A DNA stretch of 64,000 bases. Source: Octopus sinensis. Lineage: Eukaryota. Numbering within the stretch: the stretch's first letter is position 1; each line of letters begins with the position of its first letter. The stretch is from positions 70,556,001-70,620,000 of the forward strand of contig NC_042999.1 in NCBI RefSeq assembly GCF_006345805.1, given 5' to 3'. A model generated the notes under the pieces. That model did no database searches. It was not told where the DNA came from and was given only the letters and a program-made list of their open reading frames with translations. This document shows, piece by piece, positions 3,488-63,213 of the stretch. The position numbers and the translations under genes are program-made.

Positions 3488-3815
3488 GGTGCATGTTGAT
3501 ACTAAGTCAAACTCGATAGCAATAGCCGTACTTATATGAATACATACATAGATAATACGCAATTCATATGTACTTTTATATGTGTAACACGAAGATATAT
3601 TTTTTTAAAATCTTTTATTGTAACCACAAAATAACATCAAATTACAATGCTATAAACAAATAAAACGGTCTAAAACATCTATGGTCAAAGGGTCCGTGAC
3701 AAATTATCAAAACTGGCGACTGTGGACAAAGAAAGTGTTTCTTATAACTTAATCAACAAAATATTTAATAAAGAGAAAATTCTCACATGAGAATATGTGT
3801 GTATATATATGTATG

Positions 3816-3870
<55 letters not shown>

Positions 3871-4334
3871 ATAATGTCTCTGTTTGTATGTTATCTGAAC
3901 ATATTCAACCACATAAATGTTTATATATTAAACATTTCCAGTGTCCTATTACAGGCAATTTTATTCATAACAAATGCCATAAATATAAGTTTTACACAAA
4001 TTTTTTATAATACCTCACTAAAATAACATTTTACTAATAAAATATATAAAGCATATTCATATTTAAAGATTTCAAATGAAAGTGTACCAACTGTAAAAAA
4101 AAAACTGAAGAGAAATATGCGTGTAAGCAAATTTCTGTCTAGTCAGTTTTTAACAGAAGGAACAATGTGTAGTAGTTTACCGGCTATGTTACACGTTGGA
4201 GCGGCTGCTAACTGGTCTGTCACTCTCTCAGAAGCGGCTCTCGCAAACAGCCTTATCTGTTGATAAAAATCACAGAAACGAAACTACACAATATCTTTTT
4301 CCATCTTAAGTAAAGTCATTTCTACACATTCGGA

Positions 4335-4406
4335 ATGAGTAAAACGAAAAAGAAGACGCAGAATAACAACGAACAGCCGAAACATGCTAAAAAGTCCGGA
4401 GTAATG
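4335..4406 (+). pseudogene. Upstream duplicate of exon 1, one base shorter (phase 0, out of frame with exon 2)
   Basis: Same as 5299-5371 except GGAGTAATG|GTAAAT instead of GGAGTAAATG|GTAAAT; 72 nt. Could be an assembly artefact. Confidence 0.5.
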
Positions 4407-4765
4407 GTAAATATTTTCCTAACGCACCTAGAGAAAAAAAAAGTAAAAAAAAAAACTATTCGCTTAAGTGACACGTCAGTTAAAGTGTTCTCTCAAGTAA
4501 TGGCACCCTAGTTTCTTGCTTGCCTCCCTTACAATAATTATACATAATCTACTGTTTATGTGTATATACATAGAATATTTTTTTGATATTGATATATAAA
4601 TATATTTATATATATCTCATCTATATATCTATATATATATATATACATACAAACATACACGTGTTTCATATAAATATATATGTATATATATGTACATACA
4701 AATGTATGTATATGCATATATATATATATGATATATACACATATTGGTATGTATATGTATATATA

Positions 4766-4835
<70 letters not shown>

Positions 4836-5114
4836 ATAATGTCTCTGTTTGTATGTTATCTGAACATATTCAACCACATAAATGTTTATATATTAAACAT
4901 TTCCAGTGTCCTATTACAGGCAATTTTATTCATAACAAATGCCATAAATATAAGTTTTACACAAATTTTTTATAATACCTCACTAAAATAACATTTTACT
5001 AATAAAATATATAAAGCATATTCATATTTAAAGATTTCAAATGAAAGTGTACCAACTGTAAAAAAAAAACTGAAGAGAAATATGCGTGTAAGCAAATTTC
5101 TGTCTAGTCAGTTT

Positions 5115-5298
5115 TTAACAGAAGGACAATGTGTAGTAGTTTACCGGCTATGTTACACGTTGGAGCGGCTGCTAACTGGTCTGTCACTCTCTCAGAAGCG
5201 GCTCTCGCAAACAGCCTTATCTGTTGATAAAAATCACAGAAACGAAACTACACAATATCTTTTTCCATCTTAAGTAAAGTCATTTCTACACATTCGGA
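5115..5298 (+). promoter_or_regulatory. Probable promoter/5'UTR of the ASPH-like gene (second copy at ~4150-4334)
   Basis: Non-repetitive, CpG-containing stretch (CCGGCTATGTTACACGTTGGAGCGGC...GCGGCTCTCGC) just upstream of the candidate ATG, in an otherwise CpG-poor window. No TATA box identified. Confidence 0.4.
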
Positions 5299-5371
5299 AT
5301 GAGTAAAACGAAAAAGAAGACGCAGAATAACAACGAACAGCCGAAACATGCTAAAAAGTCCGGAGTAAATG
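5299..5371 (+). CDS. ASPH: Putative first coding exon of ASPH-like gene (MSKTKKKTQNNNEQPKHAKKSGVN + G)
   Basis: ATG at 5299 in a CpG-retaining region. 73 nt to a G|GTAAAT donor (phase 1), matching the phase-1 acceptor at 47630 (G|AA = E). The short basic cytosolic start fits a type II ER protein. The link across 42 kb is inferred from phase and composition, not from transcripts. Confidence 0.6.
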
Positions 5372-5715
5372 GTAAATATTTTCCTAACGCACCTAGAGAA
5401 AAAAAAAGTAAAAAAAAAAACTATTCGCTTAAGTGACACGTCAGTTAAAGTGTTCTCTCAAGTAATGGCACCCTAGTTTCTTGCTTGCCTCCCTTACAAT
5501 AATTATACATAATCTACTGTTTATGTGTATATACATAGAATATTTTTTTGATATTGATATATAAATATATTATATATATCTCATCTATATATCTATATAT
5601 ATATATATACATACAAACATACACGTGTTTCATATAAATATATATGTATATATATGTACATACAAATGTATGTATATGCATATATATATATATGATATAT
5701 ACACATATTGGTATG

Positions 5716-5770
<55 letters not shown>

Positions 5771-11088: not shown

Positions 11089-11723
11089 TACACATATATA
11101 TATGTATGTATAAAAAGCACCATTCGATTGTGGCCGTTTGCCAGCCTCATCTGGCACCTGTGCAGGTGGCACGTAAAAAGCACCCACTGCACTCACGGAG
11201 TGGTTGGCATTAGGAAGGGCATCCAGCTGTTGAAACACTGCCAGATCAGACTGGGCCTGGCACAGCCTACTGGCTCCCCAGACCCCAGTTGAACCGTCCA
11301 ACCCATGCTAGCATGGAAAATGGACATTAAACGATGATGATGATGAATACATGTGTGTGTCTGTGTTTTTCCCTCACCAGTGCCTAACAACTGCTGTTGG
11401 TGTGTGTATGTCCCCATAATATGGCTGTTTGACAAAAGAGGCTGATAGAATAAGTACCAGGCTTTAAAATTAAAATATTGGGGTTGATTCATTTGACTAG
11501 AGATTCTTCAAGACAGTACCCCAGCATGGCCACAGTTTAATGTCCACTTTCCATGCCAGCATGGGTTAGACGATTTGACTGAGGTCTGGTGAACCAAATG
11601 GCTGCACCAGACTCCAATCTGATCTGTCAGAGTTTCTACAGCTGGATGCCTTTCCTAATGCTGTATATATATATATTTATTTTGCTGTTGTGACCCTACA
11701 TTGATAGTAGAGTCAACTCTTTC

Positions 11724-18420: not shown

Positions 18421-18486
<66 letters not shown>
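18415..18486. repeat. (TA)n microsatellite. Similar (TA)n/(TG)n/(TC)n/(GTAT)n tracts at ~3800-3870, 4760-4832, 5715-5772, 17420-17465, 18848-18903, 19050-19100, 40030-40100, 60481-60540, 63404-63460
   Basis: Direct inspection. Confidence 0.95.
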
Positions 18487-18746
18487 CTAAGCAATAAGGG
18501 TTTAGCAACGAGTTGCCTTACCACATACCGAATTTAGAAATAGCAGTCAAAGGGTTATAGCTATTTCTTCTACTAAAAAGGGAGATCTCAGTAAAAACAG
18601 CATTTTTTAGCATTTGTTCTCAAGAACAATGCTGTTTTTACTGAGATCTCCCTTTTTAGTAGAAGAAATAGCTATAACCCTTTGACTGCTATTTCTAAAT
18701 TCGGTATGTGGTAAGGCAACTCGTTGCTAACCCTTATTGCTTAGTA
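18485..18746. repeat. Near-perfect fold-back (~120 bp arms), probable TA-target MITE
   Basis: TACTAAGCAATAAGGG...AACAGCATT is the reverse complement of AATGCTGTT...CCCTTATTGCTTAGTA with one indel; it sits at the end of a (TA)n tract. Confidence 0.9.
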
Positions 18747-18843
18747 TTACTTAAATTTTCCTCGAATGAGGCTTTTACATGCCGAAGACTACTTGGTGTA
18801 ATTGATAATTTTTCCAAATTAATTAATTTCACCCTTCATTATT

Positions 18844-22369: not shown

Positions 22370-23535
22370 GCTTCTACCCCTACTGGCAATAAAGGGCCTC
22401 TCACTCAGAGTGAAAGGTAGATTGTGCAATGCATGTATGCAAACTGCCATGCTTCACGGCAGTGAAAGATGGACCAAGACTGTGGTGGACATGCGTGGGC
22501 TCGAAAGAAATGAAGCTAACATGATCCGCAGGATGTGTAATGTCAGTGTCCATGCACAATAGAGTGTAAACGCCTTGAGAGAAATGTTGGACATAAGAAG
22601 CATTGGATGTGGCGTGCAGGAGAGACGCTTGCGTTGGTATGGTCGTGTACTACGGATGGATGAAGTGAGATGTGTGAAGAAGTGCTACTCCCAAACTATT
22701 GAAGGAATCCGGGGTAGAGGTAGACCCAGGAAGACATGGGATGAGGTGGTCAAGCATGACCTTCGAATGTTGGGCCTTACAGAGGCTATGATAAAAGACC
22801 AAGACCTCTGGAGATATGCTGTGACTGCGAAGACCCAACAAATGAAGTGAGTTGATGGCTCGCAGGATGGCCTACTGTGCTAACCTTGGATTGTAGGGTG
22901 CCCTGCTGTGCTTGAGGAGACCTATTGAGTCAAGTACATCAACATCAAACTAAAAATCAAATGGATATTGTAGTTGTGATACCCGTGCTGGTGACATGTT
23001 GGGCCCCATGGAGGCAATGACGAAAGACCGAGACCTCTGGAGATATGCTGTGACTGTGAAGACCCGACAAATGAAGTGAGTTCGTGGCTCGCAGGACGGT
23101 CTGCTGTGCTAACATTGGATCGTAGGGTGGCCTGCTGTGCTTGAGGAGACCTACTGAGTCAAGTACGTCAACATCAACATCAAAATAAAAATCAAATGGA
23201 AATTGTAGTTATGATACCCGTGCCGGTGACATGTAAAAAGCACCATCTGAATGTGGCTGATGCCAGCGCCGCCTGACTGGTGTCCGTGTTGGTGACACGT
23301 AAAAAGCACCAACCGATCGTGGCCATTTGCCAGCCTCCTCTGGCCCCTGTGCCGGTGACACGTAAAAAGCACCCACTACACTCACGGATTGGTTGGCGTT
23401 AGGAAGGGCAACAAGCTGTAGAAACACTGCCAGATCAGACTGGAGCCTGGCGCAGCCTCGTGGCTTTGCAGACCCTGGTCAAACCGTCCAACCCATGCTA
23501 GCATGGAAAAAGGACGTTAAACGATGATTATGAGG
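22370..23535 (+). mobile_element. RTE-clade LINE 3' end with 3'UTR and (GAT)n-like tail
   Basis: KGLSLRVKGRLCNACMQTAMLHGSE, RRLRWYGRVLRM, GRGRPRKTWDEVVKHDLR. The 3'UTR has GTGCCGGTGGCACGTAAAAAGCACC-type units and ends CATGCTAGCATGGAAAAAGGACGTTAAACGATGAT. Confidence 0.9.
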
Positions 23536-33944: not shown

Positions 33945-34836
33945 AAATGCTCAGCAGCATTTCTTTCAGTTTTATCTTCTGAGTTCAAATTTCATCAAGG
34001 TCAATTTTGCATTTCAACCTTTTGGAGTCAATGAAATAAGTATCAGTTAAGCACTGTGGTCGATGTAATTGACTTATCCCCTTCTCCAAACTTGCTGGCC
34101 TTGTATCAAAATTTGAAACCATTATTATTATTATTATTATCATTATTATTGAAGGCAGTGAACTGGCAGAATTGTTAGCATGCCAGGCAAAATGCTTAGC
34201 AGCATTTCATCCATCTTCATATTCAGAGTTCAAATTTCTCTGAGGTTGACTTTACCTTTCATCCTTTTGGGGTCAATAAATTAAGTACAAGTCAAGTACT
34301 GGGATTGATGTGATCAATTATCCCACTCCCCACAAACTCCAGGCCTTGTACCTACAGTAGAAAGGATTATTATTATTATTATATTATCATTATTATTGAA
34401 GGCAGTGAACTGGCAGAATTGTTAGCATGCCAGGCAAAATGCTTAGCAGCATTTCATCCATCTTCATATTCAGAGTTCAAATTTCTCTGAGGTTGACTTT
34501 ACCTTTCATCCTTTTGGGGTCAATAAATTAAGTACAAGTCAAGTACTGGGATTGATGTGATCAATTATCCCACTCCCCACAAACTCCAGGCCTTGTACCT
34601 ACAGTAGAAAGGATTATTATTATTATTATTATTATTATTAAGGCAGCGAGCTGGCAGAATTGTTAGCACACTGGGCGAAATGCTTAGTGGTATTTCATCT
34701 GTCACTACATTCTGAGTTCAAATTCAGCCGAGGTTGACTTTGCCTTTCGTCCTTTCAGGTTTGATAACTTAAGTACCAGTTATGCACTGGGGTCAATGTA
34801 ATCGACTAGTCCTCTTCCCAAATTTCAGGCTTTGTG
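33945..34836 (+). mobile_element. Four head-to-tail SINE family B copies separated by (ATT)n. Other copies (approximate) at 41745-41960, 56655-56860 (+) and 3290-3385, 14420-14600, 46985-47225 (-)
   Basis: GAGCTGGCAGAAT(C/T)GTTAGCA...TTCTGAGTTCAAAT...TTTGCCTTTCATCCTTTCGGGGTCGATAAATTAAGTACC-type core. From memory this resembles a conserved Meta-type SINE domain; not verified. Confidence 0.88.
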
Positions 34837-34839
34837 TCT

Positions 34840-35785
34840 TTTGTATGTGAGCTGTTGTGGTCACCATTTGTTGAACACACTTTTCTGCAGCTCATCTCCT
34901 TGACAGAACCACAGTACTGGATCAGGCATAGACTGAAGCAGGGTGCTTGGCACCTAGAGTGTCTCCGAGTGCTCACAGCTCTCAGCCAGTCAGGCAATGT
35001 GGTCGGTAGAAGTTCCACCTTGGAGTTCTATAGGGGATTAATGGAGGGCAAGAGTGATGACATACTCAGACAGGTCCTGGTGTTGAGGAGGATCAACTGG
35101 CTGGTCTCTTCCAGAGGACTTTCAGGCCGGGAACAATGGATAACTTTCATAAATCCCTGGCCTGGCAGTGCTACCAAGGAGCGCTGCCAGTTCAAGATAA
35201 GCTCTATAGGCACGGGTGTGCAGTCAGTCAGTCTGAGATGCACACAGAGCAATGAAACCGTTCTGTTTGCTCTAGTACAGTACTTGCACATTGCTGACTT
35301 GTGGAGCTTTGTCAAACAGTTATTGTTGCATGTAAGGTGGATCTGGCTATCATCCAAGTCCATTGTGAAGCTCGCCCTGCCTTCTTCCTTTGGCCAAGGC
35401 CCTATTAACTTTTTCAGGTTCCACCTGAAAAGGAAAGTGAGGCTGGAGAGGGAGGTACTGTCACCCAGTAAGTTCATTGAAAGGTGGGTGAATGTGGCAA
35501 GAATGGCCCATGTGGATGGGCCTACTCTAAGTGTGTGCCTGTAGACCAGAAGGAAAGAAGAAGAAAGGGTGCCTTCCTGAGGAGCCATTGGTGTTAAGCG
35601 GTTCAAAGTGAATGCCTCTTTGCTCACCTTATGGTGGAACTCCCCATTGTTGGAAGTATATTGTTGATTTAATCTCTTTGTTAATTGTGTTTGTTGGCTG
35701 TTTACACGTTTAACCTCACTGTCCCTTGTCTGTGTATTGTCCTCTATGTTTTGTGTTCAGCCCTGGTGGCCAGTAAAGAAAGAAT
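34840..35785 (+). mobile_element. Tx1/L1-clade LINE, 3' fragment (ORF2 C-terminal Cys/His region and 3'UTR)
   Basis: ORF 34834-35544 with FYRGLMEGKSDD, LRCTQSNETVLFALVQY (decayed CxxC-ETxxH-like motif) and FFRFHLKRKVRLERE..F.ERWVNVAR. Ends AGTAAAGAAAG followed by (ATT)n. Confidence 0.7.
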
Positions 35786-43818: not shown

Positions 43819-44713
43819 CATGTCCTGATCAATAAGTATCCAGACTGTTGCTATAGTAACAAAGCTAAAGCATGGAAAGTGAAGCTACTTGACATAGATT
43901 GATCTTGAACTCTGCTGTGCATGTGCACTAAGTTTTAACATTCTAGCTCACTTCCACTGTTTACAGCAGTGCTTGGAAGGAAGGTGGGTAGTGTGTGATT
44001 GTCGCATTGACCATGACAGAGAAAGTCGAGCAGAGAATCTACATCAAATTTCGCAAAAAGTTTCGCAATACCTGCTCAGAGGCCTATGCAAAGTTTTCAA
44101 AAAGTTTTCATTGTTCTCAACACAATCAAGGAGATCTTGTGCAACTGAAATCCGAGTGTCTTTTTGGTCAGCTGAAAACTGTTTTGGTACAAACTTGGTA
44201 GACACACGTCTCATACCCAAATCTTCAGGGATAATGGACTGAACTGAACCGTAACTAATCTGCACATCCTCTGATAACTCACAAATGGTGATTCAACAAT
44301 TTCCCCTCACAGCTGCATGCACGTCTGTGATGTTTTTCTCAGTTCTGCTGGTTGCGTGTCTCCCCAAACATTCATCAATATCAACATTTTTTTGGCCATT
44401 TTGGAAACATCTGAACCACTTGTACACTTTCGTGCAGCTCATACACTCCTCTACATACACTTTCTGCAACTTTGCCCAGGCCTCTGAGCAGGTATCGCCA
44501 TGACAACTTTCTCTATCACGGTCAATGTGACGATCACACACTACATACTTTCTTTCCAAGCACTGCTGTAAACAGCAGAAGTGAGCTAGGATGTTAATAC
44601 TTAGTGTGCATGCACAGCTGAGTTCAAGGTCAATCTGTGCCAAGCGGCTTCACTCTGCATGCTTTAACTTTGTTACTATGGCAACAGTCCGGATATTTAT
44701 TGATCAGATCTCG
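43819..44713. mobile_element. Non-autonomous mariner derivative with two 5' ends facing each other (~280 bp inverted arms)
   Basis: TA on both flanks. The left arm encodes MTEKVEQRIYIKF..TCSEAY; the minus strand encodes TCSEAWAKLQKVY..VYKWFRCFQNG and IIPEDLGMRRVSTKFVPK (mariner HTH and WVPR-like linker). No catalytic domain. Confidence 0.88.
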
Positions 44714-47629: not shown

Positions 47630-47896
47630 AAAACACAAAGAAAGAAAATACAAAGAAAGAAAACACGAAGAAAGAGAATGGAAAGAAAGATCATATGAAG
47701 AAAGATAATACAAAAAAAGATAATATAAAGAAAGACAATATGAAGAAAGACAACAACAAAAAAGAGAGCAAAAGGTCTCAAAAGAAAAAATCTGGTGTCT
47801 GCTCAGTGCTTGGCAAATTCTTGCTTGTTATTGTGCTCTGTTCCTCAGCATTTGTCACGTTATACTTTCTGAATGATAATGTTCGTGAAATTGTTG
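47630..47896 (+). CDS. ASPH: ASPH-like exon 2: KKEN/KKDN repeats plus signal-anchor transmembrane helix
   Basis: Acceptor TTTTTTGTTTTCTTTCAG|A at 47629/47630 and donor G|GTAAGT at 47896/47897; 267 nt, phase 1-1. Encodes ENTKKENTKK...KKKSGVCSVLGKFLLVIVLCSSAFVTLYFLNDNVREIV (basic tail, then a hydrophobic stretch). Confidence 0.8.
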
Positions 47897-49799
47897 GTAA
47901 GTATTTAAAACTTATTTTTGGTGCTCTTGTTTTAATTGATAATGTCTTGTGTTAGTAAAATTGTTGTTTTTGTTGATGATGTGTAACCTTTACATCAGCC
48001 TTCTTCATTGCTACTGCTATTGTTTAGGTATAGTGATCCCAGTTGGTCTTGCTTGAGCTGAGCTATAATTATTGTTGCTGGGGATTAGTGACTCTAGTCA
48101 GTCATGTTTGAATAGATCTATAGTTTAAGGGTAGCCAACTGAACAATGAGGGGGCATCTTGCAAGTTTGTACTTTGAATATGCTGAAACTGTTTCTTTTG
48201 AGGTCAGGGGTTTGAAAAGTCCAGAAGAAAGATACCTTTAAATTATGATTATATGATTGCATTAAAAAAAATATATAAACAACATAACCCGAAGCTATCT
48301 TCTCAGTAAGATAAAGTATGATTATATACAGATAATTGAATGTTATGTATTGTGTGATAAAATCTATAATTAATCTGAGTCACTTTCTGTCAGAGCTACC
48401 CCATATTCTGTATACAACAGAATTTCTTTATAAAGTATATATGCCTAAACGAGACAGCATGTGTCTTTTTAAGTTAACTAGTTCTTGTAAGAGTTCAAGC
48501 AGACTTAAGATTATGAGTCTGTTTCCTGATTTTGTGCACTCATTAAGTTGGGGTTTAAACTCCTAAAATATTCACAGTTTACATACTGTACTTATATACA
48601 ATCAATCAGATATTATATGTGCTGTATTGTGTAATATATACTTAGTCTTTGTCATTTTCGTTCAAGCAGTGTTACATTCTGTTTATAATGTGTACACTTA
48701 AATGAGAGTGCAATGTAACATAGGTTTACTGGATGTTGTACAGGTCTAAATGATCTTGAATTTGCATTAGTCTTCCTAATCCAACAATCTCATTAATTTG
48801 GGTTTCAACCCAGAATAATCTTAGCAACAAAACCAGATTACTTCATATACTGTGTGGTATAATTTATGATTAATATAGACTAGTTTGCGAGTAGCGACTT
48901 GATTGTTAAGGTACCACTAGAGAATCTGTGGCCAGGTAGGATATTTGGTGGTCAAGCAGTCTAGCTAACACCATTTCTTATCAAGTATACCTCAGAGAAG
49001 ATTTGGTCTCAGCACAACCAAATAAATACTTGTCAGGTGTAATGCTGAAGCATATATTATACTAATAGAAAGTTTGCAACTCTGTATTCCATTTTATCCA
49101 TATTTTTATCAAAAAAATTTTGTCAGTCATTGTAAGTCTGACTGTCATCAATGGACATGATGTAAGTGTTGCAGAGATTTTATAGAGATTTAATGGAAGA
49201 GGTTTCTTTAAAACAAATGTAGTACTGTTGAGTCTCATTACCTATTAGATCATCAGATGTCTTTGAGGATTTCATTGTATGATATGTTTCTAATAGTCAA
49301 AATGAGGCTGGTGATGCAGGTTCTCCCAGTTATTGACACTTATGTGTATAATCATCATCATCATCATCGTTTAGTGTCTGCTTTCCATGCTAGCATGGGT
49401 TGGGCGGTTCAACTGGGGTCTGGGAAGCCAGAAGGCTGCACCAGGCCCAGTCTGATCTGGCAATGTTTCTACGGCTGGATGCCCTTCCTAACGCCAACCA
49501 GTCCGTGAGTGTAGTGGGTGCTTTTTACGTGCCACCAGCACAGGTGCCAGACGAGGCTGGCAAACGGCCATGATCGGATGGTGCTTTTTATGTGCCACCG
49601 GCACGGGGGGCAGGCGAGGCTGGCAACGGCCACGAACGGATGGTGCTTTTTACGTGCCACTGGCACGAGGCCAGTCGGGGCGGTGCTGGCAATGGCCACG
49701 TTCGGATGGTTCTCTTACGTGCCACCGGCACTGGTATCACAGCTGCAATTTCCATTGATGTTGAAAATGTTCAATTTAATAATGTTCAATTAAATTTCT

Positions 49800-53857: not shown

Positions 53858-55487
53858 ATCCCCATATTGAAAAAGCAAAGATAGTTTCAGATGCCTACAT
53901 TGGAAAAGCTATGTTAACCCTGTTTCCAAAAAGTGATGCTCCAGACACTGATACTCCAGAAGAAAAAGTGAAAGAATCTTACCCATTAGAAAATGATTTT
54001 ATTGATGATGGTGAAGGAGAATTACAAGGCAATTTACCACCTCCTGATACAAAAGAATCTGATTCTTTGGGCGATGACAAGTTGAAAGAAAGTAAATCAC
54101 AAAAAACTGCTGAAGCAATAAAGGAAACAGCTGAAAAAAGTCAAAAGGCAGCAGAGGAGGCTAAGAAGGCTGAAGAGGCTAAGAAAGCTGAAGAAGCCAG
54201 AATAGCAGCAGAAGAGGCTAAGAAAGCTGAAGAGGCCAGATTAGCAGAAGAGGCTAAAAAAGCTGAAGAAGCCAAAATAGCAGCAGAAGAGGCTAAGAAA
54301 GCTGAAGAGGCCAGATTAGCAGAAGAGGCTAAAAAAGCTGAAGAGGCCAGAATAGCAGCAGAAGAGGCTAAAAAGGCTGAAGAGGCCAGAATAGCAGCAG
54401 AAGAGGCCAGAATAGCAGCTGAAGAGGCTCAACAAGCAGAAGAAGCCAGAAAAGCCGAGGAGGCTAGACTAGCTGAAGAGGCTCGACAAGCAGAAGAAGC
54501 CAGACTAGCTGAAGAGGCTCGACAAGCAGAAGAAGCCAGAAAAGCTGAAGAGGCTAGACAGGAAGAAGAAGCGAAGAGAGCTGAAGAGGCTAGACAGGAA
54601 GAAGAAGCTAAGAGAGCTGAAGAGGCTAGACTGCTAGAAGAGGCAAGAATAGCAGAAGAGGCTAGACTAGCAGAAGAGGCTAGACTAGCAGAAGAGGCTA
54701 GACTGGAAGAAGAAGCTAAGAGAGCTGAGGAAGCTAGACAGGAAGAAGAGGCTTGGAGAGCTGAGGAAGAGGCTAGACGGGAGGAAGAGGCTAGGAGAGC
54801 TGCTGAGGAAGAGGCTAGACGGGAGGAAGAGGCTAGGAGAGCTGCTGAGGAAGAGGCTAGACGGGAGGAAGAGGCTAGGAGAGTCGCTGAGGAAGAGGCT
54901 AGAAGAGCTGCTGAGGAAGCTAGACGGGAGGAAGAGGCCAGGAGAGCTGCTGAGGAAGCTAGACAGGAGGAAGAGGCTAGGAGAGCTGAGGAAGCTTGGA
55001 GACAGGAAGAAGAGGCTAGGCGGGAAGAAGAAGCTAGGAGAGCTGAAGAGGCTAGACAGGCAGAAGAGGCTAGGAGAGCTGAGGAAGCTAGACAAGCAGC
55101 TGAGGAGGCTAGGAGAGTTGCAGAGGAAGCCCGAGAAGCAGAAGAACTTAGAAAAGCAGAAGCTGAAAAAGCAGCTGAGGAGGCCCGTAGATCTGCTGAA
55201 GAAGCACAACGAGAAGCAGAAGAAGCAAGAAAAGCAGAGGAAGTGAGAATAGCTGCAGAAGAGGCCAGGAGAGATGCAGAGGAAGCAAGGGAGGCTGAAA
55301 GACAAAAAGAAGCTGAAAGACTAAAAGAGACTGAAGAAGCTAGTGAAAAAATAGAAGAATCAAATAATTCAGCTAAATCAAAAAAAAAGTCAAAAAAAAT
55401 GAATCTTATAAAAAAAGTGACATAACCAATGAAGATGATCGCAAAATTCAAAAAGAACTGGATGCAGCTGATGAATTATTGGAAAAA
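53858..55487 (+). CDS. ASPH: ASPH-like exon 3: acidic luminal segment, ~400 aa E/A/R/K repeat, start of pre-TPR region; one-base frame break near 55380-55399
   Basis: Long polypyrimidine tract and CAG|AT acceptor (phase 1, G|AT = D, compatible with exon 2). Open to TAA at 55425. The -1 frame reads [29 protein letters not shown] to an AAA|GTGAGT donor at 55487/55488, with 9 of 22 identities to recalled human ASPH LLNKFDKTIKAELDAAEKLRKR. Confidence 0.82.
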
Positions 55488-55504
55488 GTGAGTCCTTAAA
55501 TGAA

Positions 55505-55510
55505 AATAAA
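55505..55510 (+). terminator. Candidate intronic poly(A) signal AATAAA just after the exon 3 donor
   Basis: AATAAA starts 17 nt after the GT at 55488, following GTG AGT CCT TAA, with T-rich and GT-rich sequence downstream. AATAAA is common by chance in AT-rich DNA. Confidence 0.35.
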
Positions 55511-56059
55511 TTTATAATTGTAATTTTTACCATCTTTTTTTTTTCAATCCTTTTATTGATATGTGTGTGTGTGTTTTGTGTGTATGTGTATGTATATGCT
55601 CACTTAGTCTTGAATCTTCCAATTCAAAAAAAAATATGCATTACCTTATTTTATTGTATATAAGTATTTCTTTCATACCCAACTATAATTTTTAATATAT
55701 CTAAAGTGTTTCACTTCAGAAAACAGTGGTTGTAAGGTTATGGCGCTAAATAATACAGACCATATCAAATAAGGTTATGAGTTTAAACCTAACTATTACT
55801 ACACTTTATGTTTGGGCAAGATCTCACAATTCTGTTGCCTGGCAGACAATATACACCTAGGTTTGGTGGAACAAACAGGATAAATAGAACTTATTACATA
55901 AGTATATAAATATTGTTTATCATTTTCAATTATAAAGTTATAACCTAATTCAAGGGCTGGGAGTTTCATGCATAGCCCTTTTGCAATTTCCTTATGCAAA
56001 CACAAAATTCTTGGCCCTTGAGTCATTTTGTAACTTCTGCTGATTAGTAATAATAATAA

Positions 56060-60538: not shown

Positions 60539-62051
60539 TCAGGTTAGTGCAAAAGTAATGTCCAATTTAAAGATCTAAGGTAAAAATGAAAAAGCCAATG
60601 ACAATGGAAATATTTATTCATTAACATACAGGTGCAGGAGTGGCTGTGTGGTAAGTTGCTTGTTTACCAACCACATGGTTCCGGGTTCAGTCCCACTGCG
60701 TGGCACCTTGGGCAAGTGTCTTCTACTATAGCCTCGGGCCGACCAAAGCCTTGTGAGTGGATTTGGTAGACGGAAACTGAAAAGAAGCCCGTCGTATATA
60801 TGTATATATATATATATGCGTGTGTGTGTCTGTGTTTTTCCCCCTAGCATTGCTTGACAACCGATGCTGGTGTGTTTATGTCCCCGTTACTTAGCGGTTC
60901 GGCAAAAGAGACCGATAGAATAAGTACTGGGCTTACAAAAAGAATAAGTCCCGGGGTCGAGTTGCTCGATTAAAGGTGGTGCTCCAGCATGGCCGCTGTC
61001 AAATGACTGAAACAAGTAAAAAGAGTAAAGAGTATACTCTCCATTGCTTTCAATGACCTCATTCTATCTATCAACAAACCTGTTTCAGTCTCTTCTCTTG
61101 TTGTTAGCCTAGGTCCATCTAAATGGTTCTGTAGTCCACAAAACAAATGGTATTCAGAAGGAGCAAGGTCAGGAGAATATGGAGGATGAGGCAGTGTTTC
61201 CCAACCAAGTTCTTCCAAGAGAGTTTGGTCAGTCAAGCTGTGTGAGGATAAGCATTATTGTGATGGAAGATGACATTCTTTCTGTTAACCAAGGATGCTT
61301 ACACTTGACTCAGAACTGTTTTCAAATGAAGTTGCTCACAGAAAATATTGGATTATTCTTTTAATATCCTACCATACACTCAACATGTTCTTCTTTGGAT
61401 GAAGTCCTGCTCTCTGTTGTTGAACTGGCTATCCTCTTCGACTGATCCAAGAATGGTGGCATTTAACATTATGGTAAAGAATCCACTTCTCACCACCTGT
61501 AACAAGTCCGTCTAAAAATGTTGCTTGAAAGTGTCGCGAAAGCAATGATTGACAAAAAGCAGCATGCTGTTGTCGATTCTCTGGAGACAGCTCATGAGGG
61601 ACCCATTTTCCAGCAAGTTCACTAGTGGTAACGGTCGGGTTCTCTGAAACAAGAGCTTCCAACATTTCGGAATCAAGTTTTTTTGGACAACCCTCTTTTG
61701 GCTCTTCTTTCAAAGTGAGATCACCACTTCGGAAATGAGAAAACCACCTCCTGTAACTTCTTTCATTCACTACATCATCCTCATAAGTGCTCTGAATAGA
61801 TCTTGCTACTGTACTTGCATTAACACCTGAAAACTCGTAGAGTAAAACATTTCTTATGTGATCTTTAGATGGAACAAACATGGTGGTAAAATTTTCTGAG
61901 ATTTATGGCCAGAAGTTAGATAATCTGAAAGAAAATAGTACAAATTAGACACAGAGATATCTTAAAACCATAAGAAGAGGTTTAAAAAATTGATAAATTC
62001 ACTCTGAAACATTTTTTCTAGAAATCGGACATTACTTTTGCACCAACCTGA
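60539..62051 (-). mobile_element. Decayed mariner (Hsmar1/cecropia-like TIRs) with a SINE inserted at ~60630-61030
   Basis: TIRs TCAGGTTAGTGCAAAAGTAATGTCC / GGACATTACTTTTGCACCAACCTGA with TA flanks. Transposase motifs GKWVPHEL, VTGGEKWILY and HPPYSPDLAPSEYHLF. Confidence 0.92.
60630..61030 (+). mobile_element. tRNA-derived SINE family A, full length. Other copies (approximate) at 9650-9770, 9805-10200, 10750-10910, 44990-45110, 58140-58535, 63772-64000 (+) and 615-760, 18245-18405, 37980-38200 (-)
   Basis: GGCTGTGTGGTAAG A-box-like, GGTTCAGTCCC B-box-like, ACCTTGGGCAAG core, internal (TA)n/(TG)n, simple-repeat tail. Confidence 0.88.
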
Positions 62052-62057
62052 TATGTA

Positions 62058-63213
62058 CAGGGGCTGGACAAAATAATGGAAACACCTTAAAATTTCAAAC
62101 AAATTTATTTTAATATGGAGTAGGACCCCCTTTGGCAGTAATTACCACTTGAATTGTACTCATACAAAGTCTGAGTTGTTTCCAAAGGCATTTTAGTTCA
62201 TTCTTCAGCTAAAAAAGTCTCCAGTTCTTGTAGTGATGATGGTGGAAGATATCGACTCCTTATTTGTTTTTCTAAAATGCACCATAAATGTTCAATAATA
62301 CTGAGATCTGGGGACCGTGGTGGCCAGATAAGATGTTCAACTTCACTAGAATGTTCCTTATGCCATTCAGTAACAATTTTAGCTGTGAATTGGTGCATTA
62401 TCAGCCTGAAAGATTGTGTTTCCCTCCATAAACAGTTCGGCAACTATAGGATGAATGTGATCAGATAAAATACTTAACCCTTTCGTTATTGTATTTATTT
62501 TGAGATGCTCTGTGTTTCTTTCAATTACTTTAAATATAACAAAGGATTTAGTAAAATAACTTTTAGTTATCATTCAGCTAGTGTTAGGAACATAAATTGT
62601 GACTAAGGTTTGGTGGAAGATTTTAATTCAAAACTTATGAAAACAAGACATTTGTACTCAGAGCCAGAGCTGGATTCAGCCAGGTTGGTAATGAAAGGGT
62701 TAAATAGTCTTGCCTATTAATTCTGCCATGAAGGGAAACCATTGGACTGGTGGATTTCCAAGATGTAGCGCCCCCCCCCCCACACACACACACAGATCAT
62801 CACATATCCTCCTCCATGTTTAACAGTTGGAAGAAGGCAGTCTGGGTCAAATGCTTCTTTTGGCTGTCTCCACATGTATACTCAGCCGTAGGTCAAAAAT
62901 AAGGTAATGGATGACAAGTCCGAGGAAATAACATTCTTCCACTGTTTTTGTTACATGAGTGGCTGCCATACGAACACCAACAATTTAACCACTTAGAAAA
63001 TCCAATAGATCTGTCATTTTAATGAATTTTAATTACCTTTTTCTGATGATATCTGGAAAAAAAACCCGCAATTTTAAGCAAAACCTATTAAGCAACGCTA
63101 ATTATAAATTTAAAAAAAAACATAAAAATAAATAAGCTTTTGACGGTTTTATAGATATTTCAAAATTATGATGGTGTAAGGCTAGGTGTTTCCATTATTT
63201 TGTCCAACCCCTG
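62058..63213 (-). mobile_element. Decayed Tc1-like transposon with a piggyBac-type MITE inserted
   Basis: TIRs CAGGGGCTGGACAAAATAATGGAAACACCT / AGGTGTTTCCATTATTTTGTCCAACCCCTG. Motifs FQADNAPIH, WPPRSPDLSIIEHLW and PTVKHGGG. Confidence 0.92.
62474..62703. mobile_element. piggyBac-type MITE
   Basis: TTAA-CCCTTTC ... GAAAGGG-TTAA. Confidence 0.75.

What the first reader, a model, noticed from the sequence alone, without database searches (positions are those of the whole stretch)
55378..55487. ASPH reading frame is broken by one base at an A_AAA_AAG / poly-A run, exactly before the conserved domain
Seen: frame 0 reads TCA AAA AAA AAG TCA AAA AAA ATG...TAA (55425). The ASPH-like motif and the exon donor are in the -1 frame, reached by adding one A to the A9 (55380-55388) or A8 (55392-55399) run. 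Known: A_AAA_AAG is a classic -1 slippery heptamer, A9 runs allow transcriptional slippage, and ASPH genes make a catalytic form plus a truncated non-catalytic form (humbug/junctate). Inference: a homopolymer sequencing error is the most likely cause. If the sequence is real, slippage would give a ~635 aa non-catalytic protein and the full enzyme from one mRNA. I see no downstream stimulatory RNA structure, which argues against efficient ribosomal frameshifting.
Basis: partly seen in the sequence, partly recalled or inferred. Interest (0 to 1): 0.7.

Follow-up and report, generated by a model that had tools for sequence, protein, structure and literature searches.

The report
One-base frame break in ASPH exon
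The aspartyl beta-hydroxylase (ASPH) gene in this window is one base short inside a run of A's just before its conserved domain, most likely because the genome assembly miscounted the run rather than because of a new recoding mechanism.

Summary
Exon 53858-55487 is open in one frame up to TAA 55423-25. The last 37 codons and the GTGAGT donor (55488) sit in the -1 frame. The two frames overlap only across A9 (55380-88), A8 (55392-99) and A7 (55410-16). The ASPH identity could not be shown with human ASPH, PDB or Pfam. It was shown with 150 ASPH-family representatives: a profile of 31 of them hits only the -1-frame segment in the whole window (E=3e-9), and the frame-0 tail matches nothing. In a limpet, a chiton and a bivalve the orthologous exon is one continuous frame ending at the same phase-0 donor. 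In the chiton and the bivalve it enters in phase 1 and its length is 2 mod 3; here it is 1630 nt, 1 mod 3. So exactly one base is missing, in A9 or A8 and not in A7. There is no downstream RNA structure (z=-0.53), no usable cryptic intron, and no frameshift in any orthologue examined. Best reading: a homopolymer length error in what looks like a long-read assembly (about 0.7). Rivals are a genuine one-base deletion allele made leaky by slippage (about 0.2) and programmed recoding (about 0.04). Reads and close relatives could not be reached, so error versus real is inferred, not shown.

The parts
47630..47899 (+). Upstream ASPH exon of 270 nt, phase 1 in and phase 1 out. It encodes a lysine-rich cytoplasmic (ENTKK)n repeat and the transmembrane anchor VLGKFLLVIVLCSSAFVTL, followed by YFLNDNVREIV.
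   Evidence: Acceptor ttttctttcAG and donor G|GTAAGT. Kyte-Doolittle 19-residue maximum is 2.29. 'YFLND..' resembles chiton 'YFLNED..'. An intron in phase 1 lies at the same place after the TM helix in the chiton and the bivalve.
53858..55487 (+). Large luminal ASPH exon of 1630 nt (1 mod 3). It contains a unique N-terminal part, E/A/R/K-rich tandem repeats, a lysine patch and the conserved pre-TPR motif. The frame is broken once.
   Evidence: The orthologous exons of the chiton (194 nt) and the bivalve (731 nt) are 2 mod 3, with phase 1 entry and phase 0 exit.
54150..55126 (+). Tandem repeats (periods 18, 36, 54 and 75 nt) encoding [10 protein letters not shown]-type low-complexity sequence.
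   Evidence: Tandem Repeats Finder. GC skew is 0.34 and AT skew 0.37 for 54-56 kb.
55380..55388 (+). A9 run, one candidate site of the missing base. It contains the heptamer A_AAA_AAG (55383-55389) in frame 0.
   Evidence: Adding one A gives ...[14 protein letters not shown]..., which scores 32.0 bits against the ASPH profile.
55392..55399 (+). A8 run, the other candidate site of the missing base.
   Evidence: Adding one A gives ...KKKSKKNESY..., which scores 32.7 bits, so it cannot be told apart from A9.
55410..55416 (+). A7 run, an unlikely site for the shift.
   Evidence: Conservation in the -1 frame already covers ESY at 55401-55409. A repair placed here scores about 5 bits lower, 27.3.
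55423..55425 (+). TAA stop of the long frame, 62 nt upstream of the exon's donor.
55377..55487 (+). The -1-frame segment [37 protein letters not shown]. This is the conserved ASPH lysine patch plus the motif that directly precedes the TPR domain.
   Evidence: Profile E=3e-9. blastp against 150 ASPH representatives gives a best E of 2e-9, with 58% identity over 36 aa to gastropods. About 35 representatives hit it by tblastn.
55488..55493 (+). Donor GTGAGT, phase 0 in the -1 frame.
   Evidence: The donor has the same position and phase after ...L.(E/D)K in Patella (GAT AAG|GTAGGT), the chiton (GAA AAG|gtagac) and the bivalve (GAA CAG|gtaatt).

Best explanation
The locus is the orthologue of aspartyl/asparaginyl beta-hydroxylase (ASPH) in an AT-rich, repeat-rich animal genome; the nearest matches are molluscan. 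The window holds its transmembrane exon and the large luminal exon that ends just before the TPR domain. The remaining exons lie beyond the window. The large exon is exactly one base too short. The deficit lies in the A9 or the A8 run that encodes the family's conserved lysine patch. The most likely cause is a miscounted homopolymer in the assembly. In that case the real gene has A10 (or A9 in the second run) and encodes one continuous protein, ...[12 protein letters not shown](V/S)[32 protein letters not shown], followed by the TPR and oxygenase domains. Shown here: the frame break, its position, the ASPH identity, the continuity of the orthologous exons, and the lack of recoding signals. Inferred: that the missing base is an artefact rather than a property of the animal's DNA.
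For: (1) The break lies within 24 nt (55377-55400), of which 17 are A-run. This is the sequence class where long-read consensus errors concentrate (PMC8812927, PMC12007338). (2) The window has no N in 64 kb despite about 30 dinucleotide microsatellites, which points to a long-read assembly. (3) The downstream 37 codons are intact and 50-62% identical to ASPH of gastropods, a chiton, bivalves and an annelid. The donor is also intact. (4) The orthologous exon in Patella, Liolophura and Potamilus is one frame, with the donor at the same place and phase. In Liolophura and Potamilus the entry phase is 1 and the length is 2 mod 3, against 1 mod 3 here. (5) There is no stimulatory RNA structure after the heptamer. 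(6) No plausible cryptic intron exists, because all in-exon acceptors are A-rich. (7) In the one young duplicate in the window, 5 of 8 differences are 1-bp indels, which is compatible with residual indel noise.
Against: No reads, transcripts or close relatives could be reached, so the error is not demonstrated. The rest of the 1565-nt frame is uninterrupted. The A9, A10 and A11 runs inside the 99.2% tandem duplicate have identical lengths in both copies. The assembly is therefore not grossly noisy at homopolymers. A9 runs are also genuine mutational hot spots, so a real one-base deletion allele would look exactly the same.
Confidence: 0.7

Rival explanations
1. The one-base deletion is a genuine germline allele: heterozygous, polymorphic or recently fixed. 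The main product is a truncated type II membrane protein (TM helix, E/A/R-rich luminal repeat, tail ...[14 protein letters not shown]). A few per cent of full-length enzyme comes from unselected RNA-polymerase slippage or ribosome slippage on the A-runs, that is, a leaky loss-of-function allele.
For: Homopolymers are indel hot spots. Frameshifting indels in short homonucleotide runs can be bypassed by polymerase or ribosome slippage (PMC9375231). Real poly(A)-tract frameshifts rescued by polymerase infidelity are known in insect endosymbionts (Tamas 2008 and Wernegreen 2010, as listed in the references of PMC9375231). Homopolymer calls elsewhere in the window look consistent.
Against: The downstream frame and donor show no decay, so the allele would have to be very young. 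The stop lies 62 nt before an exon junction, with many exons still to follow, so by the 50-55-nt rule (background knowledge) the mRNA would be a target for nonsense-mediated decay. No orthologue examined has the break.
Confidence: 0.2
2. The break is programmed recoding fixed in this lineage. One mRNA population would give mostly a humbug/junctate-like non-catalytic protein and a set fraction of catalytic ASPH, through transcriptional slippage at A9 or -1 ribosomal frameshifting at A_AAA_AAG.
For: The heptamer is in the correct frame, and a -1 shift there gives exactly the orthologue-like product ...[10 protein letters not shown].... Runs of 9 A or T support efficient slippage by bacterial RNA polymerase (PMC5009743). 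Vertebrate ASPH loci do make both catalytic and truncated products (PMC2625362).
Against: There is no downstream structure (z=-0.53). A_AAA_AAG owes its shiftiness to the single tRNA-Lys of E. coli and is not among the most shifty heptamers listed for mammalian ribosomes (PMC5009743). The frame is continuous in a limpet, a chiton and a bivalve. Any lysine patch encoded by A-runs would offer such a heptamer by chance. The frame-0 tail has no homologue. No cellular animal enzyme gene is known to me to use this mechanism.
Confidence: 0.04
3. The frame is corrected by splicing. An internal acceptor (AG at 55388-89) would join a phase-1 donor ending in G, such as the TM exon, directly to TC AAA AAA AAT..., giving [16 protein letters not shown]... 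This would skip the repeat region, as in the short chiton exon.
For: The phase fits. G from 47899 plus TC at 55390-91 restores the same GTC codon and the ASPH frame (and my own arithmetic). The chiton orthologue has only about 64 codons between the TM exon and the donor.
Against: The would-be acceptor is preceded by caaaaaaaaAG, with poly-A in place of a polypyrimidine tract. The genuine acceptors in the window are almost pure pyrimidine. The phase match has a one-in-three chance. It would also leave the 1.5-kb open repeat frame without a route to the catalytic domain.
Confidence: 0.03
4. The stop is genuine, this is the last coding exon of a non-ASPH or junctin-like gene, and the -1-frame similarity is chance.
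For: Human ASPH alone gave only E=1.5. PDB and Pfam searches of the peptide found no ASPH. An AATAAA lies at 55505-10.
Against: The family profile gives E=3e-9 and is the only hit in the window. About 35 ASPH representatives hit the same 90 nt. Intron positions and phases match ASPH orthologues on both sides of the exon.
Confidence: 0.01

Closest known systems
Homopolymer-length errors in long-read genome assemblies that fragment genes
   Same: A single-base deficit inside an A8-A9 run, in an otherwise intact and conserved gene, in a gap-free, repeat-rich contig (PMC8812927, PMC12007338).
   Different: This could not be demonstrated here, because no reads were available. Other long A-runs in the window are called consistently between duplicate copies.
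Vertebrate ASPH / humbug / junctate / junctin locus
   Same: It shares the type II membrane anchor, a charged low-complexity luminal region, a lysine patch (human KAKVKKKKPK) and then ..ELDAAEKL.. before the TPR and oxygenase domains. Truncated non-catalytic products exist in vertebrates (PMC2625362).
   Different: In vertebrates the truncated forms come from alternative splicing and promoters, not from a frame break. The E/A/R repeat here has no counterpart among the 150 representatives.
E. coli dnaX -1 frameshifting at A_AAA_AAG
   Same: The heptamer is identical, sits in the zero frame, and a shift would give a two-product outcome.
   Different: dnaX has stimulators on both sides of the shift site (background knowledge) and relies on the single bacterial tRNA-Lys (PMC5009743). 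Here there is no downstream structure and the ribosome is eukaryotic.
Transcriptional-slippage rescue of poly(A)-tract frameshifts (Thermus dnaX; Buchnera and Blochmannia genes; potyvirus P3N-PIPO)
   Same: A run of about 9 A/T at the frame junction, where adding one A to the RNA restores the frame (PMC5009743, PMC4552492; Tamas 2008 as listed in PMC9375231).
   Different: Those cases involve bacterial or viral polymerases and are conserved across relatives. Here the orthologues examined have intact frames, and RNA polymerase II slippage at A9 has not been measured.

Membership tests
ASPH (aspartyl/asparaginyl beta-hydroxylase) orthologue | Conserved lysine patch plus the SY.K..ITN..D..I(R/Q).ELD.AD.L.EK motif directly N-terminal to the TPR domain | tested here: met
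   The profile of 31 ASPH proteins hits 55377-55496 at E=3e-9 and nothing else in the window. The best blastp E is 2e-9.
ASPH (aspartyl/asparaginyl beta-hydroxylase) orthologue | N-terminal type II transmembrane anchor preceded by a basic cytoplasmic tail | tested here: met
   The exon at 47630-47899 has a Kyte-Doolittle maximum of 2.29 over VLGKFLLVIVLCSSAFVTL after a lysine-rich tail. Pfam Asp-B-Hydro_N was not matched, so this rests on hydropathy and gene structure only.
ASPH (aspartyl/asparaginyl beta-hydroxylase) orthologue | Intron positions and phases shared with ASPH genes of other molluscs | tested here: met
   A phase-1 intron follows the TM helix in the chiton and the bivalve. A phase-0 donor follows ...L.(E/D)K in the limpet, the chiton and the bivalve.
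ASPH (aspartyl/asparaginyl beta-hydroxylase) orthologue | TPR domain and 2-oxoglutarate oxygenase domain (Asp_Arg_Hydrox) | not testable with these tools
   These domains are not in the window. No hit lies downstream of 55487, so the next exon is more than 8.5 kb away.
Programmed -1 ribosomal frameshift site | Slippery heptamer X_XXY_YYZ in the zero frame at the frame junction | tested here: met
   A_AAA_AAG lies at 55383-55389. It is an automatic by-product of a lysine patch encoded by A-runs.
Programmed -1 ribosomal frameshift site | Stimulatory stem-loop or pseudoknot a few nucleotides downstream | tested here: not met
   Folding 55390-55520 gives an MFE of -13.7 kcal/mol against a shuffle mean of -12.25, z=-0.53. 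The fold is nested only, so pseudoknots were not searched.
Programmed -1 ribosomal frameshift site | Frame break conserved in related species | tested here: not met
   The frame is continuous in Patella, Liolophura and Potamilus. Close relatives were not available.
Productive transcriptional slippage site | Homopolymer of about 9 or more A/T at the junction | tested here: met
   A9 at 55380-88 and A8 at 55392-99.
Productive transcriptional slippage site | RNA population with extra A's relative to the DNA | not testable with these tools
   No transcript or read data for this organism could be found.
Assembly homopolymer error | Reads disagree with the consensus run length | not testable with these tools
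   No reads were available. Indirect evidence only: the break sits in an A-run, the downstream frame is intact, and the contig looks like a long-read assembly.

The most novel reading that the evidence does not exclude
The A9/A8 lengths are genuine and fixed in this lineage. Catalytic ASPH would then be made only from the minority of transcripts that gain an A in the run, or from ribosomes that slip -1 at A_AAA_AAG. One gene would yield mainly a humbug/junctate-like membrane protein with an E/A/R-rich luminal domain plus a metered amount of enzyme. Recoding would be doing the job that alternative splicing does in vertebrates.
Probability: 0.04. Interest if true: 0.75.

Novelty: not a real feature. 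Interest (0 to 1): 0.15.

Why it matters
If it is an artefact, the value is practical. The gene model should be repaired or flagged, and the site marks residual homopolymer errors in this assembly that will truncate other proteins. The work also gives a clean annotation of an invertebrate ASPH with an unusually large E/A/R-repeat luminal exon. If the run lengths were genuine and conserved, this would be a rare case of recoding in a conserved cellular enzyme gene of an animal. It would be worth direct experiments, but the evidence does not point that way.

Tried and rejected
1. Human ASPH against the window gave only 11/23 identities, E=1.5.
2. The 37-aa peptide found no ASPH among PDB sequences, and Pfam gave no Asp-B-Hydro_N match. 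Single-sequence evidence was therefore insufficient, and a family profile was needed.
3. Two searches of the 5.8-billion-protein set with window-specific sequence (TM exon, unique N-terminal part and repaired junction) found nothing, even at E<=10. No close relative or same-species gene model could be obtained.
4. The human query returned only primate isoforms. The 50%-clustered library solved that problem.
5. Exact look-ups of the frame-0 ORF in public assemblies found nothing on record.
6. An exact-pattern scan of JGI metagenome contigs, allowing variable A-run lengths, gave 0 matches.
7. I looked for a cephalopod among 30 named representatives and found none.
8. An enumeration of cryptic introns gave 27 frame-correcting GT..AG pairs, all with A-rich acceptors. 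I rejected them.
9. I tried to choose between A9 and A8 with the profile, but they scored 32.0 and 32.7 bits, which does not resolve them.
10. I tried to gauge assembly indel noise from internal duplicates. The result was suggestive but inconclusive.
11. The search for the first coding exon found no convincing candidate.
12. A Logan transcript whose ORF starts at MKSSITN (L004) turned out to be a retained intron in an unrelated animal, not a parallel frameshift.

Full report
**What is in the sequence**

The window is AT-rich (about 35% G+C), full of microsatellites and transposon remnants, and contains no N. Exon 53858-55487 follows a strong acceptor (tttctttcAG) and is followed by GTGAGT. One frame is open from the acceptor to TAA at 55423-25. 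It reads a unique 97-residue part, about 330 codons of E/A/R/K-rich tandem repeat and then ...[23 protein letters not shown]. The -1 frame opens at 55377 and reads [37 protein letters not shown], ending on a codon boundary at the donor. The two frames overlap over 46 nt that contain A9 (55380-88), A8 (55392-99) and A7 (55410-16).

**Is it ASPH?**

Initial tests gave no support. Human ASPH gave E=1.5 (my recalled sequence is exact for residues 311-758, as checked against PDB 9fvu). The peptide found no ASPH in the PDB. Pfam gave nothing relevant. Two searches of 5.8 billion proteins with window-specific sequence found nothing.

I then collected 150 representatives of the ASPH family using human ASPH as the query. 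About 35 of them hit the window by tblastn, all at 55398-55487 in the -1 frame, with 50-62% identity over 26-30 residues. By blastp the 37-mer reaches E=2e-9. Examples are Batillaria IKPPKSGRESYAKSAITNDDDYKVRKKLDEADDLLE and Patella KSKKVKVEEYDKSEITNKLDDKIRVELDAADDLYDK. The frame-0 tail and the frame-0 continuation after the stop match nothing.

A profile of 31 family members hit exactly one of all the six-frame segments of the window, 55377-55496, at E=3e-9. Its consensus is kkkkkkkekykkakitnkeDkkirkeLdeadkllek. The best matches are molluscs and an annelid. The upstream exon 47630-47899 supplies a lysine-rich tail and a transmembrane helix. The TPR and oxygenase exons are not in the window.

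**Gene structure comparison**

I fetched the ASPH loci of Patella vulgata, Liolophura sinensis and Potamilus streckersoni. In all three, the low-complexity luminal region, the lysine patch and the ITN/ELD.AD motif lie in one exon and one frame. That exon ends with a phase-0 donor right after ...L.(E/D)K.

In the chiton and the bivalve, the preceding exon ends one base into a codon just after the transmembrane helix, as it does here (G|GTAAGT). Their large exons are 194 and 731 nt, both 2 mod 3. The window's exon is 1630 nt, 1 mod 3. Exactly one base is therefore missing (or two are surplus).

Conservation in the -1 frame already covers ESY at 55401-09. A repair placed in A7 scores 5 bits worse than one in A9 or A8, and those two cannot be told apart.

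**Mechanisms considered**

- **Ribosomal frameshifting.** The heptamer A_AAA_AAG (55383-89) is in the right frame. However, any lysine patch written in A's would provide one. The 131 nt downstream fold no better than shuffles (z=-0.53). The heptamer's fame comes from E. coli, and it is not among the most shifty heptamers listed for mammalian ribosomes (PMC5009743).
- **Transcriptional slippage.** A9 is long enough for bacterial polymerases (PMC5009743). Poly(A)-tract frameshifts rescued this way are known in endosymbionts (cited in PMC9375231). I have no data for RNA polymerase II at this site, and the orthologues examined do not have the break.
- **Splicing.** All 27 frame-correcting GT..AG pairs inside the exon use A-rich acceptors. 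One of them, AG at 55388-89, is in phase with the transmembrane exon, but it is preceded by poly-A.
- **Genuine termination.** The stop lies 62 nt before an exon junction. By the 50-55-nt rule (background knowledge) this would expose the mRNA to nonsense-mediated decay.

**Error or real?**

I could not reach reads, transcripts or close relatives.

Points in favour of an error:
- The site is a homopolymer.
- The downstream codons and the donor are perfectly preserved.
- The contig looks like a long-read assembly.
- The only young duplicate in the window differs mostly by 1-bp indels.

Points against an error:
- The other 1565 nt of the exon are in frame.
- The A9, A10 and A11 runs within that duplicate agree between copies.

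My estimates are: assembly error about 0.7, genuine and possibly leaky deletion allele about 0.2, programmed recoding about 0.04, and splicing or other causes for the remainder.

**Verdict**

The feature is most likely not biological. The solid by-product is an annotation of part of an ASPH orthologue with an unusually large E/A/R-repeat luminal exon.

Noticed in passing
window 3802-4789 and 4766-5752: A tandem duplication of about 965 bp at 99.2% identity. Five of the 8 differences are single-base indels in short runs or TA repeats. The A10, A9 and A11 runs inside it are identical in both copies.
   Followed up: partly
window 61432-61902(-), 60973-61254(-), 62201-62443(-), 44047-44649(-): Decayed Mos1/mariner-type transposase fragments lie in the ASPH introns (HTH_48, E=9e-15 and 3e-5).
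   Followed up: partly
window 54429-55451(-) and 54685-55305(-): Long antisense ORFs (340 and 206 aa, Ser/Ala/Leu-rich) lie opposite the purine-rich E/A/R repeat. They are a by-product of the repeat composition, not evidence of a gene.
   Followed up: no
window 55497-55510: If the intron is retained, the -1 frame ends ...LLEKVSP* at TAA 55497-99. An AATAAA follows at 55505-10, 18 nt after the donor. This is a conventional route (intronic polyadenylation) to a truncated, humbug-like product, but the signal is expected by chance about once per 850 nt in this composition.
   Followed up: no
window 55411-55425: The frame-0 tail ends in KKVT, which has the form of a KKXX di-lysine ER-retrieval signal. 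In a type II protein the C-terminus would be luminal, so this is probably a coincidence of the lysine-rich context.
   Followed up: no
window 47630-47770: The cytoplasmic tail of the TM exon is itself a 15-nt tandem repeat encoding (E/D)NTKK-like pentapeptides, about 9 units.
   Followed up: no
window 34810-35756: Two overlapping ORFs of 244 and 242 aa lie on opposite strands in a relatively G+C-rich stretch. Neither has a Pfam match, and their nature is unknown.
   Followed up: partly
window 11110-11346, 23300-23533, 49355-49591 and others: A SINE-like repeat family (conceptual peptide HASMGWTVQLGSGKPEGCARP...) is scattered through the window at 88-92% identity. A 264-nt palindrome lies at 18484-18747.
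   Followed up: no
L004 1-2189 (Logan SRR31252247): An ASPH transcript contig from an unidentified animal. It has an E/A/K-rich upstream ORF (2-433), then a retained intron of about 274 nt, then ...SYLKSSITNSQDFPLRHELDKADELL... So charged E/A/K repeats ahead of this motif also occur in ASPH of another animal, and there an intron separates them from the motif.
   Followed up: partly
L002 21650-22480 (Liolophura ASPH locus): The exon encoding EAYEVYKAGADLGLFLSMYQRSLYNVDH appears in about six tandem near-copies (79-96% identity to the protein) within 900 bp. This could be duplicated exons or an assembly artefact in the chiton genome.
   Followed up: no
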